The notes: generated by a model not told the origin, from the letters alone. Shown: positions 55,353-58,749, counted from the stretch's first letter. The stretch: 64,000 nucleotides of DNA from Pecten maximus (GCF_902652985.1 NC_047027.1:17112001-17176000), one strand, 5' to 3'. A program made the numbers and translations.

Positions 55353-56208
55353 GAGTATAAAGTAACAAGGAATGCTGTACTGTAAAGTGATCAACAAATA
55401 CAATGAAAGAGGTTATGCAGCACGGCTATTGAACATCCTTAGTGGGAGAGATATCCACCGCCAACCTAAATTGTTTAAAAGATAGGTGACTTTTTGGAAA
55501 CCCAAAACCAGGGTACGTTTGACAAAGCTTTGTATATATTGGATTATCTGCCGTGATTTTCTACTCTCCACTTGGGGTCGCTAAGTAAGGCGGATAAACC
55601 GGAAATACATCATTGTGATTATGACGTCATCTGTTGACATCACGTGTCATCTCTTATCAACGAGATTCACGACTTCGGTAACGATATGGCCTATTTCGCT
55701 CTCACATTTTCTTTACTTTCTCAAAGTTTTCCTTTGAAGAACTATTGTCACAGATACAGTCAACACGGTGAGTGACACGTGCAAGTGATATTCTGACAAA
55801 TTCGCTTTAAAACATTTTCAGAAATACTGTTTTTAAACGTTCTCTGAAAGTCCACGGGACAAGGAAGGAGGGGCTAGCGGTACATTACGGTGTAATCTTG
55901 TTACAAATATAACATCTGTGCGTATTTATCTGTTTAAAGAAAAACAACAGGACAATGTGTTGGTATTTATGATTAATTAAATCAAGAAATTAACGTTGGT
56001 TTATAATGAATCACAATCTTATGCAGCCTGTTTATTTTTTCTTAAGATTCACGAAGATTCAGCCTCAGTTACGCGCCAAGAAAAGACATTGGTGGCCACA
56101 TCGTCCAGTTGATCAAAACTTGGTTCGGTAATAATATGTGCTTTATTATTTTTTGTTCCATCCGACACAGGCGCCTTGACAAGTGTAACAGGAGAGGAGA
56201 AAATGTAG

Positions 56209-56280
56209 TGGCCAGACCGGGGTTCGAACCCGGGACCTCCGAACACTAGCCGGATGCTCTACCAATTGAGCTACATGGTC
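56209..56280 (-). ncRNA. tRNA-like cloverleaf (second copy) in the 3' LTR
   Basis: Same 72-nt sequence with three substitutions, one adding an acceptor-stem mismatch. Confidence 0.65.
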
Positions 56281-56426
56281 ACCGATGATCGACCCAGTCG
56301 TCCCGACTACACAACTCCCTCCTTTTTTCCAAGTCTTCGCCCTCGAAGACACACGAGACCCTTATACCACCACCGTGGGTATTTTAGTTGGGCGCCAATT
56401 TTGTAACAGGAGAGGAGAAAATGTAG

Positions 56427-56498
56427 CGGCCAGACCGGGGTTCGAACCCGGGACCTCCGAACACTAGCCGGATGCTCTACCATTTGAGCTACCTGGTC
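56427..56498 (-). ncRNA. tRNA-like cloverleaf (anticodon AGT, Thr-like) in the 5' LTR
   Basis: D arm GCTC/GAGC, anticodon stem TCCGG/TCGGA, T arm CCGGG-TTCGAAC-CCCGG, acceptor GACCAGG/TCTGGCC with one mismatch; intact A and B boxes. Confidence 0.7.
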
Positions 56499-57846
56499 AC
56501 CGATGATCGACCCAGTCCAGTCCCGCTACACAAGTAAGTTTTATAGTTGGTAAGAATGAATACGACACATAATGTGTCCATATAAAATGATAATTTATTG
56601 ATTTATAATTTACAGAAAATACGCATGATATGCAATGATATGTGATCTGTTAGATTTAAAGTGATTGTTATAAGTTAGTGACATCGCCAGTGATTGTCGA
56701 TTAATATTTCAAATAGTTTTACATCAATTGCACCAATTACATGCTGAGGCAAATCGTTTCAGTTGTATTTTACTCGGACGATGAAAAGGGGTTTTCTTAT
56801 CTGTAATCAACAACACTTCTTGAATAATTTCTGTTTTTGATATCTTTTATTGTTAACATCCATTTTAAACATATTACACTTGACAAGATTGTCATAGATG
56901 TTATTTAGAATTTTAAATACGATGGTCAAATACCTTCCGATACGACAGTATTCCTATGATTACAGGTTTAATCGTTGTAGCCTCTCAGAAAACGTGAAGT
57001 TTTTGAGACTCGGTACAAGCTTTGTGGCTCTTTGCTGGAAATTTTTAATGTCTTTCACTTTGAATGGACTCCATACTCTGGAAGCATATTTCAAACGAGG
57101 CTTTACAGATGCCTTAAATAGTAGTTTAAACATTTTTCATCTAGATCTAACTATGTAAATATTTTACCAGCTCTATAGATTATGAAGAATTTTCTATTTT
57201 TCCTTGAATTTGATCAAAAGTACCCCTGTTTTTGTTTGGGTAGAATTTTAACAATATTTTTTTCTGATCAATGACCAAAGAAAAAGTCAGAATACTTTTA
57301 TGTGGGTATTTCTTTCTTGTTTTATCATTAAAATGATAAATGATAATAAAAAAAAAACACTCACAATTACAAACAATGTTACAAGGCCTTTCGCCAAATA
57401 GAGATTTTTATTGATTTGTAAATCAATTCTTTTACATTTTTTGCATCATTAGAATATAGTTTAGACAAGGAAGTAGTCCTATGGAAACATTAAATCACTC
57501 TATGTGGAAAAAGATCCGTTTTGGTTACTGGTCGGACTTCGGACCTCCGTCCTTCAACATTTTTCGCATTTGATGTGAGATATGCATTTCAGTTTTTCTA
57601 AGACTATATAGGTTTAAACATGGAATGTAGAAACAATTGTAGATTTAAAGTTCGCACAGATTCCCGGCTTTATTCGTCTTAATAATAGAGTCGTCGCCGG
57701 TGAGGTTATGTATTGGTGGACTCATGGGTTCCTGGGTCCCTAGGTTGGATACCGAAGGTATGCAGGGTGTTGAAGTAAAGAAACAATACAAACTAGGCGG
57801 GGTCAATCACAACAGACAAAGGGAACCTCATTGGTACATCTGTTTA

Positions 57847-57889
57847 TTGTCGACCGGTTTCGTCCGTTCCGTAGGCTTCTTCAGGACAA
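57847..57889 (-). ncRNA. Minimal type I hammerhead ribozyme, Penelope-like-element style
   Basis: - strand reads TTGTC-CTGAAGA-AGCC-TACGGAAC-GGAC-GAAA-CCG-GTC^GACAA: stem I TTGTC/GACAA, cores CUGANGA and GAAA, palindromic ACCGGT stem III, GUC cleavage triplet, AATAAA right after. Confidence 0.7.
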
Positions 57890-58749
57890 AGCAGATAATA
57901 TTTGTACCCCTAAAGTACTAAAAATGAGGATGCCACATGTATTGTTAATTGTGAGATATTATGAAATTTAACTGACATATTTAGGTTATCAACCATAACA
58001 TACATTAAAACGTTCTGTTTCCTAAACAGTGTGTCACCTGAAACATACCCGAATATACAACGTGAGACAAATAAAAAGAGTATAAACAATGCGAAAAAAA
58101 TCAGTTTCTAATAATAAATCTGTATTTCCCCTTCATTCCAGGGACATTGGGTCCACTAGAAAACCGCGGAAGTTAAGAAACAAACACAATTTGTGTACAA
58201 GGTGATCAACGGCAAGCTACCTGTCAAACAGTCACCTCCGGAAATGGCTAAAGCTGACCATTGTGGTCACGTCAGCGTTCCTGCGTACGCCGTCCAATCG
58301 GACCTGGGGTATTTTCTCCATACATCTTTGTTCTGACACCAGGGAACGATGGGGTTAACCTCCTCATAAACAGTTGGCGTGGCTATACGTACAGCAGTAG
58401 ACACAGGGACACCAAGAGGAAGTCTCGGTGGCATGTCAAAGGTCAGGGACGTGTTGATCCAAATCTATATATAGAACTTTTGTTTATGATGCTTTCTGGA
58501 TATATATAATATATCATATAACATTTTTTGATATAATATAATATATACTTAATGGTCGTTGCAAATTAAACAACATGGCGGAATGTAGACGTGATTGATT
58601 TGATTTTAGTGTGAAAATAATGATGATACCCAACAGGCGAAAAATGTGTACTCTGCATAACCCAGTGTCTTCCTGTTATTCGATCTGCATGCCTGTCCGT
58701 GCTTTTTGTTTGCTCCTCGTGTTTGTTTTTACCATTACTTGTACGTACA

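What the first reader, a model, noticed from the sequence alone, without database searches (positions are those of the whole stretch)
56184..56530. Complete 347-bp LTR mini-retrotransposon whose LTRs each contain a tRNA gene-like cloverleaf
Seen: on the - strand, 5' LTR (129 bp, TGTAGC...TTACA), then AAAT, PBS TGGCGCCCAAC, a 90-bp non-coding interior, PPT GGAAAAAAGGAGGGAG, and the 3' LTR (128 bp), with CAAG duplicated on both flanks. Each LTR holds a 72-nt cloverleaf with intact A/B boxes and an AGT anticodon, followed by TTTT. Known: the PBS matches the last 11 nt of tRNA-Lys(CTT); plant Cassandra TRIMs carry 5S in their LTRs; I recall a recently described tRNA-in-LTR group called Helenus with 4-bp TSDs in animals. 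The class may therefore not be new, though this family may be. Inference: a SINE/LTR hybrid transcribed from an internal Pol III promoter and mobilised in trans by a Gypsy-type partner. It would have to read through the T4 signal, and annotation tools would miscall it as two tRNA-Thr genes.
Basis: partly seen in the sequence, partly recalled or inferred. Interest (0 to 1): 0.85.

Follow-up and report, generated by a model that had tools for sequence, protein, structure and literature searches.

The report
Known scallop Helenus tRNA-LTR mini-retrotransposon
This 347-bp stretch is one ordinary copy of Helenus-2_PeMa, a miniature LTR retrotransposon with a tRNA-like promoter in each LTR that was already described in 2024 from this same king-scallop genome assembly, so it is real but not new.

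Summary
On the minus strand, window 56184-56530 reads 129-bp LTR, AAAT, an 11-nt tRNA-Lys PBS, a short interior, a PPT and a 128-bp LTR, flanked by a CTTG duplication. ARAGORN and Rfam call a tRNA-Thr(AGT) in each LTR.

The element is mobile. The genome holds about 358 LTR-PBS junctions and about 1,107 LTR ends. Of 30 sampled loci, 24 have perfect 4-bp duplications that differ from copy to copy, and LTR-interior-LTR-interior-LTR arrays occur.

It is not new. The genome's size and scaffold count equal Pecten maximus xPecMax1.1. Kojima 2024 (PMC10886601) published Helenus-2_PeMa from that assembly (LTR 129, interior 90, total 348, TSD 4). The window copy differs from it by about 1 nt in the 5' LTR and 2 nt in the interior.

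Pol III transcription and the Gypsy helper remain inferences. The scan flagged the same kind of element on two other pieces of this genome.

Small additions:
- The genome's own tRNA-Lys(CTT) matches the PBS.
- One locus preserves an LTR joined to a 37-nt copy of mature tRNA-Lys+CCA, which looks like a fossil of priming.
- Several Ty3/Gypsy families share the Lys PBS, TGTA...TACA ends and, in three of four read, 4-bp duplications. None is tied specifically to this family.

The parts
56531..56534 (-). Target-site duplication, upstream copy (CTTG on the minus strand)
   Evidence: The same 4 bases flank both ends. 24 of 30 loci have perfect 4-bp TSDs, with different sequences from copy to copy.
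56402..56530 (-). 5' LTR, 129 bp, TGTAGC...GTTACA. Inferred division: U3 is LTR positions 1-32, R about 33-113, U5 about 114-129.
   Evidence: It differs at one position (LTR position 48, A for T) from the published Helenus-2_PeMa LTR. The U3/R/U5 split is inference only.
56426..56498 (-). tRNA-Thr(AGT)-like cloverleaf in the 5' LTR, carrying the box A (TAGCTCAAATGG) and box B (GGTTCGAACCC) motifs
   Evidence: ARAGORN. Rfam tRNA, 50.2 bits. One acceptor-stem mismatch.
56418..56421 (-). TTTT run, the candidate Pol III terminator, in the 5' LTR. A full-length template RNA would have to read through it.
   Evidence: All 29 aligned copies have one T4 run in each LTR, at the corresponding position, and no other.
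56387..56397 (-). Primer-binding site TGGCGCCCAAC, preceded by the spacer AAAT (56398-56401)
   Evidence: It is complementary to the last 8 nt plus CCA of this genome's own tRNA-Lys(CTT) genes. The paper lists it under tRNA-Lys-CTT in Fig. S2C.
56312..56401 (-). Whole inter-LTR region, 90 bp, non-coding. The core between PBS and PPT is 56 bp.
   Evidence: It differs at 2 of 90 positions from the published Helenus-2_PeMa-I.
56315..56330 (-). Polypurine tract GGAAAAAAGGAGGGAG, followed by a 3-nt spacer before the 3' LTR
56184..56311 (-). 3' LTR, 128 bp. It has small indels near its 5' end and 3 substitutions relative to the 5' LTR.
56208..56280 (-). tRNA-Thr(AGT)-like cloverleaf in the 3' LTR
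   Evidence: ARAGORN. Rfam tRNA, 47.7 bits, with two mismatched acceptor pairs.
56200..56203 (-). TTTT run in the 3' LTR, the inferred 3' end of the template RNA
   Evidence: The role is inferred.
56180..56183 (-). Target-site duplication, downstream copy (CTTG on the minus strand)

Best explanation
The stretch is one moderately aged insertion of Helenus-2_PeMa. This is a published non-autonomous miniature LTR retrotransposon (TRIM, 'TRIMp3' type) of the king scallop Pecten maximus.

Shown:
- It has two LTRs, a tRNA-Lys(CTT) primer-binding site, a polypurine tract and a 4-bp target duplication.
- It is present in hundreds of dispersed copies with different duplications, so it spreads by reverse transcription and integrase-type insertion.
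- It encodes no protein, so the enzymes must come from elsewhere.

Inferred:
- RNA polymerase III starts at the tRNA-like box A/box B promoter, about position 33 of the 5' LTR.
- Part of the time it reads through the weak TTTT in that LTR, crosses the 90-bp interior and stops at the TTTT of the 3' LTR. The tRNA-like segment would then serve as the repeated 'R' region needed for strand transfer.
- Mature tRNA-Lys(CTT) primes minus-strand synthesis.
- Gag, reverse transcriptase and integrase are borrowed from one of the Ty3/Gypsy families in the genome that share the Lys PBS, TGTA...TACA ends and 4-bp duplications.
- The tRNA-like part is a promoter, not a working tRNA-Thr gene.
For: Identity:
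- The genome has 918,306,378 bp in 3,983 contigs. That equals the xPecMax1.1 assembly (PMC7191990).
- Kojima 2024 Table S1 and Data S1 give Helenus-2_PeMa as LTR 129, interior 90, total 348, TSD 4. The printed consensus differs from the window copy by 1 nt in the 5' LTR and 2 nt in the interior.

Mobility:
- At least 43 full-length copies at 97-98% identity.
- 358 LTR-PBS junctions and 1,107 LTR ends, with reversed controls at 0.
- 24 of 30 loci have perfect, different 4-bp TSDs, and most of the rest match at 3 of 4 positions.
- Many copies have 129/129 identical LTRs.
- Tandem arrays with a 219-bp period occur.

Primer:
- 27 genomic matches to the tRNA-Lys 3' end. The ones checked are called tRNA-Lys(CTT) by ARAGORN.
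- That 3' end plus CCA is complementary to the PBS.
- Locus L036 carries a Helenus-2-type LTR, then AAAT, then 37 nt exactly complementary to mature tRNA-Lys(CTT)+CCA.

Promoter:
- tRNA models score 48-50 bits.
- Exactly one T4 run per LTR, at the corresponding position, in all 29 aligned copies.
- By eye, the U3, T4 and U5 segments are almost unchanged in the sister family Helenus-1_ArIr of Argopecten.

Helpers:
- Elements at L064, L065 and L067 have identical or nearly identical LTRs, a Lys PBS, TGTA...TACA ends and 4-bp TSDs.
- Their reading frames match PNMA-like gag, RVT_1, RNase H and integrase, in the Ty3/Gypsy order.
Against: - No direct evidence for Pol III. The only runs served were assembled contigs, which cannot show RNA starts, ends or strand. 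Element sequence in those runs could come from host read-through transcripts or from DNA carry-over.
- The absence of other T4 runs is not statistically notable. Shuffles of the element give about 1 run, against 2 observed.
- No Gypsy family shares anything with Helenus-2 beyond the PBS and a few terminal bases, so the helper is unassigned.
- A T4 signal 5 nt after the tRNA-like part should end many transcripts before the interior. The productive RNA would then be a minority product.
Confidence: 0.88

Rival explanations
1. The element is the same Helenus TRIM, but its template RNA is made by RNA polymerase II or by read-through from host genes. On this view the tRNA-like segment is a passenger or serves another purpose, such as chromatin or insulator effects or packaging.
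For: - Many contigs in RNA-labelled runs carry the LTR joined to unrelated flanks, as expected for copies embedded in host transcripts (tables 7 and 8).
- The T4 directly after the tRNA-like part argues against efficient Pol III passage.
- The paper states that Pol III function is unvalidated for Helenus.
Against: - A transcript that starts outside the element cannot define an R region or regenerate both LTRs.
- U3 is only 32 bp and has no evident Pol II promoter.
- Box A and box B are kept across Helenus families in several phyla, and in all copies here.
- According to the paper, Cassandra, the 5S analogue, produces transcripts from its Pol III promoter.
Confidence: 0.25
2. The LTRs are working tRNA-Thr(AGT) genes. 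The element would then be a vehicle that has amplified a functional tRNA about 1,100-fold.
For: - ARAGORN and Rfam accept both copies as tRNA.
- The paper notes that seven bivalve Helenus families could encode a tRNA-Thr by tRNAscan-SE criteria. I could not see whether Helenus-2_PeMa is one of them, because Fig. S1 is held without text.
Against: - The family's common form has an A2/C71 mismatch in the acceptor stem.
- Position 37 is G. From general knowledge, tRNAs reading ANN codons carry t6A at A37.
- The anticodon stem is not kept by compensatory changes in the Argopecten sister family (by eye).
- The paper concludes that Helenus is unlikely to encode functional tRNA.
Confidence: 0.05
3. 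The unit is a conserved tandem pair of tRNA genes, or a tRNA-derived SINE, and not an LTR element.
For: Two tRNA calls lie 218 bp apart in the same orientation.
Against: - Hundreds of dispersed copies have precise TGTAGC...GTTACA ends and 4-bp TSDs that differ between copies.
- A PBS and a PPT are present.
- There is no A-rich or LINE-like tail.
- The repeat extends 32 bp upstream and 24 bp downstream of the tRNA-like part.
Confidence: 0.01

Closest known systems
Helenus-2_PeMa (Kojima 2024, Biology 13:119, PMC10886601; Pecten maximus xPecMax1.1)
   Same: Same genome assembly. Same architecture and sizes (LTR 129, interior 90, total 348, TSD 4). Same PBS, listed under tRNA-Lys-CTT. The sequence is nearly identical.
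   Different: Only copy-level changes: 1 nt in the 5' LTR (a subfamily marker in the D-loop), 2 nt in the interior, and small indels plus 3 substitutions in the 3' LTR.
Helenus-1_ArIr (Argopecten irradians; same paper)
   Same: Clearly the sister family. It aligns by eye along the whole LTR, with near-identical U3, T4 and U5 segments, the same PBS and a similar interior.
   Different: Different species. LTR 130 and interior 93. Several changes inside the tRNA-like part, including A rather than G at position 37. I compared by eye only, with no computed identity.
Cassandra TRIMs of plants (5S rRNA-derived promoter in the LTRs)
   Same: [quoted passage not shown]
   Different: The module is 5S-derived, not tRNA-derived. 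The hosts are plants. Size is 565-860 bp. Rfam finds only tRNA here.
tRNA-derived SINEs (SINE2)
   Same: A tRNA-like head with box A and box B, non-coding, short, high copy number. The paper proposes a SINE2 insertion into a TRIM LTR as the origin of Helenus.
   Different: SINEs have no LTRs, PBS or PPT and are copied by LINE enzymes. This element has all three plus fixed 4-bp TSDs.
LTR-11_DR (zebrafish Helenus)
   Same: An animal Helenus with 4-bp TSDs, thousands of LTRs and tandem arrays. Arrays are seen here too.
   Different: tRNA-His PBS and an unrelated sequence.

Membership tests
[quoted passage not shown] | Short non-autonomous element with two direct LTRs and no coding capacity | tested here: met
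   129-bp and 128-bp LTRs around a 90-bp interior, 347 bp in total.
[quoted passage not shown] | tRNA-derived sequence with box A and box B inside each LTR | tested here: met
   ARAGORN tRNA-Thr(AGT) twice. Rfam RF00005 at 50.2 and 47.7 bits. TAGCTCAAATGG and GGTTCGAACCC are read directly.
[quoted passage not shown] | PBS just downstream of the 5' LTR and PPT just upstream of the 3' LTR | tested here: met
   The PBS is complementary to the genome's own tRNA-Lys(CTT)+CCA. The PPT is at 56315-56330.
[quoted passage not shown] | 4-bp target-site duplications in animals | tested here: met
   CTTG at this copy. 24 of 30 loci have perfect, different 4-bp TSDs and none has 5 bp.
Helenus-2_PeMa (the specific family) | Sequence identity to the published consensus | tested here: met
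   Read side by side: the printed Data S1 entry against the window copy shows 1 difference in the 5' LTR and 2 in the interior.
TRIMp3 (TRIM transcribed by RNA polymerase III) | Template RNA actually made by Pol III from the LTR promoter | not testable with these tools
   Only assembled contigs were served, which show no RNA ends or strand. The paper states this is unvalidated for Helenus.
Cassandra | 5S rRNA-derived sequence in the LTR | tested here: not met
   Rfam finds tRNA only and no 5S, at E up to 1 around the element and at gathering score across the window.
Retrozyme | Hammerhead ribozyme motif in the repeats | tested here: not met
   No hammerhead match in or beside the element.
Functional tRNA-Thr(AGT) gene | Fully paired acceptor stem and A37 in the anticodon loop | tested here: not met
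   A2/C71 mismatch is flagged by cmscan. The anticodon loop is CUAGUGU, which puts G at position 37. The A37/t6A requirement comes from general knowledge.

The most novel reading that the evidence does not exclude
The least ordinary reading still open has two parts.
1. Helenus-2 is a Pol III-driven LTR element whose R region is the tRNA-like cloverleaf itself. Its replication would depend on leaky read-through of a T4 terminator in the 5' LTR.
2. The single locus L036 (an LTR starting exactly at TGTAGC, then AAAT, then a 37-nt copy of mature tRNA-Lys(CTT)+CCA) is a captured plus-strand strong-stop DNA.

If so, L036 would be the first direct, sequence-level evidence for the primer used by a TRIMp3 element. 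This extends a known family. It is not a new kind.
Probability: 0.5. Interest if true: 0.35.

Novelty: already known. Interest (0 to 1): 0.12.

Why it matters
For discovery it matters little, because the class and this exact family were published in 2024 from the same assembly.

It has practical value for annotation. About 1,100 LTRs in this genome will each be called tRNA-Thr(AGT) by standard tRNA finders, which inflates the tRNA gene count of the scallop genome and should be masked.

The family looks recently active: many copies have identical LTRs. That makes it a usable system for testing whether Helenus elements really use Pol III and how they pass their own terminator. The paper leaves that question open.

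The LTR-tRNA junction at L036 gives a concrete handle on the primer.

Tried and rejected
1. Autonomous partner.
- I scanned the genome for ...TACA, 0-6 nt, then TGGCGCCCAACG, which gave 73 hits.
- L050 first looked promising because its LTR end resembles the Helenus U5. It turned out to be a single, degraded Helenus-like LTR with no second LTR and no coding region, so I rejected it.
- Four complete Ty3/Gypsy-type elements have a Lys PBS and TGT...ACA-type ends, three of them TGTA...TACA. BLAST finds nothing shared with Helenus-2 beyond the PBS. No partner can be named.

2. Terminator depletion.
- The element has T4 only at the LTR site.
- Shuffles give about 1 run by chance, so the absence of other runs is not significant.

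3. Expression.
- Only Logan contigs were served.
- In one RNA-labelled run and three runs guessed to be RNA, the contigs cover both LTRs and the interior. Three short contigs match 56307-56431 with 0-1 differences. The flanks of this copy have no cover.
- Contig ends fall where 31-mers stop being unique. Carry-over of a 360-copy repeat as DNA cannot be excluded. This is therefore no evidence for or against Pol III.

4. Hammerhead or retrozyme link.
- Rfam finds none.

5. Neighbouring ORFs (53.4 kb and 58.9-60.5 kb).
- No Pfam match.

6. Method notes.
- One search printed a majority line of 29 copies of this non-coding TRIM, to count variable columns.
- One search printed the aligner's automatic consensus.
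- Neither was used further.
- I built no consensus for the Gypsy-type elements.

Full report
**What is there.**
- Read on the minus strand, window 56530-56184 is a 129-bp repeat (TGTAGC...GTTACA), then AAAT, TGGCGCCCAAC, a 56-bp core, GGAAAAAAGGAGGGAG, TTG, and the repeat again at 128 bp. CTTG lies immediately outside both ends.
- The repeat finder reports the two copies 218 bp apart at 97% identity over the 116 nt it aligns without gaps. A global alignment gives 124 of 129.
- ARAGORN calls a tRNA-Thr(AGT) in each repeat.
- The Rfam tRNA model scores them 50.2 and 47.7 bits, above its gathering score of 29. It marks one mismatched acceptor pair in the first and two in the second.
- A TTTT run begins six bases after the discriminator base in each repeat.
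The one amendment is that the '90-bp interior' is the whole inter-LTR stretch, including the spacer, PBS and PPT.

**It is a mobile family.**
- A search of the window's own genome found at least 43 full-length copies at 97-98% identity on many chromosomes, with 2,116 first-look candidates.
- The 24-nt LTR-PBS junction occurs 358 times at up to two mismatches. The last 25 nt of the LTR occur 1,107 times. The reversed control patterns occur 0 times.
- That gives roughly 360 interiors and 1,100 LTRs, which implies several hundred solo LTRs or relatives.
- In 30 fetched loci the ends are always TGTAGCGG...CTGTTACA, apart from single-base changes in two copies. 24 loci have a perfect 4-bp duplication, with 21 different sequences. 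Most of the others match at three of four positions, and none shows 5 bp.
- Many copies have 129/129 identical LTRs, so the family was active recently. The window copy, at 124/129, is among the older ones.
- LTR-interior-LTR-interior-LTR arrays with a 219-bp period are present.
They exclude a conserved tRNA gene pair and a SINE.

**It is already described.**
- The genome has 918,306,378 bases in 3,983 contigs. These are exactly the figures of the Pecten maximus assembly xPecMax1.1 (PMC7191990).
- Kojima (2024, PMC10886601) defined Helenus as TRIMs with a tRNA-derived sequence in the LTRs. He found them in five orders of pteriomorphian bivalves, with 4-bp TSDs in animals, and listed P. maximus among the hosts.
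- His Table S1 gives Helenus-2_PeMa from xPecMax1.1 as LTR 129, interior 90, total 348, TSD 4.
- The consensus printed in Data S1 differs from the window copy by one base in the 5' LTR and two in the interior.
- His Fig. S2C places its PBS under tRNA-Lys-CTT, beside Gypsy-125_CGi.
- A sister family, Helenus-1_ArIr of Argopecten irradians, is alignable by eye throughout. Its first 32 bases and its T4-to-end segment are nearly identical.
- The scan's own index shows two other first-reader notes of the same kind of element on other pieces of this genome.

**How it most likely works.**

*Shown:*
- The architecture of an LTR retroelement without genes.
- Integrase-type 4-bp duplications.
- A PBS complementary to this genome's own tRNA-Lys(CTT). 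27 loci match the tRNA 3' end, the ones checked are called tRNA-Lys(CTT) by ARAGORN, and the 3' end plus CCA pairs with the 11-nt PBS.

*The L036 locus:*
- A diverged Helenus-2-type LTR (88.9% over 144 nt) begins exactly at TGTAGC. It is followed by AAAT and then by 37 nt that are the exact reverse complement of the last 34 nt of tRNA-Lys(CTT) plus the non-encoded CCA. Unrelated DNA follows.
- It is the only exact genomic match to that junction.
- Ordinary copies carry only 11 of these 37 bases, so the extra 26 must have been copied from the tRNA itself.
- The simplest reading is a plus-strand strong-stop DNA that over-copied its primer and was captured in the chromosome. This directly supports tRNA-Lys priming.

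*Inferred:*
- Transcription by Pol III from the box A/box B promoter, starting near LTR position 33.
- Partial read-through of the T4 in the 5' LTR and termination at the T4 in the 3' LTR. This gives U3 = 1-32, R = about 33-113 and U5 = about 114-129.
- The logic is that a 129-bp LTR must carry a promoter that lies downstream of its own start site, so that R is defined inside the LTR. A tRNA-type internal promoter does exactly that.
- All 29 aligned copies keep one T4 run per LTR at the corresponding position and have none elsewhere. However, shuffles show that the lack of further T4 runs is not significant.

**RNA evidence is not decisive.**
- Only assembled contigs of public runs were available.
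- In one RNA-labelled run and three runs guessed to be RNA, contigs cover both LTRs and the interior. Three short contigs match 56307-56431 with at most one difference. Many LTR-bearing contigs continue into unrelated flanks. The flanks of this particular copy are uncovered.
- This fits copies embedded in host transcripts and possibly element RNA. Contigs cannot show starts, ends or strand, and carry-over of a high-copy repeat as DNA cannot be excluded.

**Helpers.**
- A pattern scan for ...TACA plus a Lys PBS gave 73 sites in several families.
- Four complete elements were read (L064 to L067). All four have LTRs that are 99.4-100% identical and a Lys PBS.
- L064, L065 and L067 end in TGTAAC...GTTACA or TGTAGC...GCTACA and have clear 4-bp duplications. 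L066 starts TGTGAC, and I could not resolve its duplication.
- I scanned the reading frames of L064, L065 and L067. They match PNMA-like gag, reverse transcriptase, RNase H and integrase, in the Ty3/Gypsy order.
- The L067 family shares the TGTAGC start and a GGAGGG-type PPT with a 3-nt spacer. BLAST finds no further similarity between Helenus-2 and any of these elements.
- A Gypsy-type helper is therefore plausible and agrees with the paper's view. No specific family is tied to Helenus-2.

**Is the tRNA-like part a tRNA?** Probably not.
- The family's common form has an A2/C71 mismatch and G at position 37. From general knowledge, tRNAs reading ANN codons need A37.
- The Argopecten sister family changes the anticodon stem without compensation (by eye).
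- The paper reaches the same general conclusion.

**Verdict.**
It is an ordinary copy of a published family in the assembly from which that family was defined.
- Novelty: already known. Interest: low.

Noticed in passing
L036:1476-1636 (minus strand), about G000:C3:19096357-19096517: A Helenus-2-type LTR starts exactly at TGTAGC. It is followed by AAAT and then a 37-nt exact reverse complement of mature tRNA-Lys(CTT) including CCA, then unrelated DNA. There is no second LTR and no 4-bp TSD. It is the only such junction in the genome. It reads as a captured plus-strand strong-stop DNA that over-copied its primer.
   Followed up: partly
L055 (G000:C8:~13625424-13625505) and L031 (G000:C1:~15060988): Head-to-head structures: LTR end, PBS, a short stretch, inverted PBS, inverted LTR end. 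One is in Helenus-2 and one is in another LTR family. They may be aberrant reverse-transcription or recombination products.
   Followed up: no
LTR position 48 (window 56483 in the 5' LTR, 56264 in the 3' LTR): There are two subfamilies, with T or A in the D-loop of the tRNA-like part. Both LTRs agree in 25 of 29 copies (14 T/T, 11 A/A). They disagree in 4, including the window copy (A in the 5' LTR, T in the 3' LTR). LTRs should be identical at insertion, so this hints at exchange between copies after insertion.
   Followed up: partly
L050 / L061-L062 (G000:C6:~18900457, minus strand): A single diverged Helenus-like LTR (79.5% over 88 nt to Helenus-2) with a decayed tRNA-like part and a 12-nt Lys PBS. 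A minisatellite of about 2.5 kb lies a few kb away.
   Followed up: partly
L063 and L058-L060 (G000:C9:30162446, 30170090, 30177734): Three identical LTR-end/Lys-PBS junctions are spaced exactly 7,644 bp apart. This is a tandem array of a full-length LTR retrotransposon, or a segmental triplication.
   Followed up: no
L027:1913-2027 (G000:C7:39949336-39949450): An inverted LTR-like sequence with 74% identity lies right next to a Helenus-2 copy. It is probably another Helenus family inserted beside it.
   Followed up: no
window 57500-58300: Another first-reader note places a minimal hammerhead ribozyme at 57847-57889. Rfam gives no match there at E up to 1, nor anywhere in the window at gathering score.
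   Followed up: partly
G000:C1:4790276-4790972 and other sites: LTR ends are spaced 224, 232, 239 or 241 bp apart instead of 219 bp. This suggests Helenus-2 variants with slightly longer interiors, some in arrays of four LTRs.
   Followed up: no
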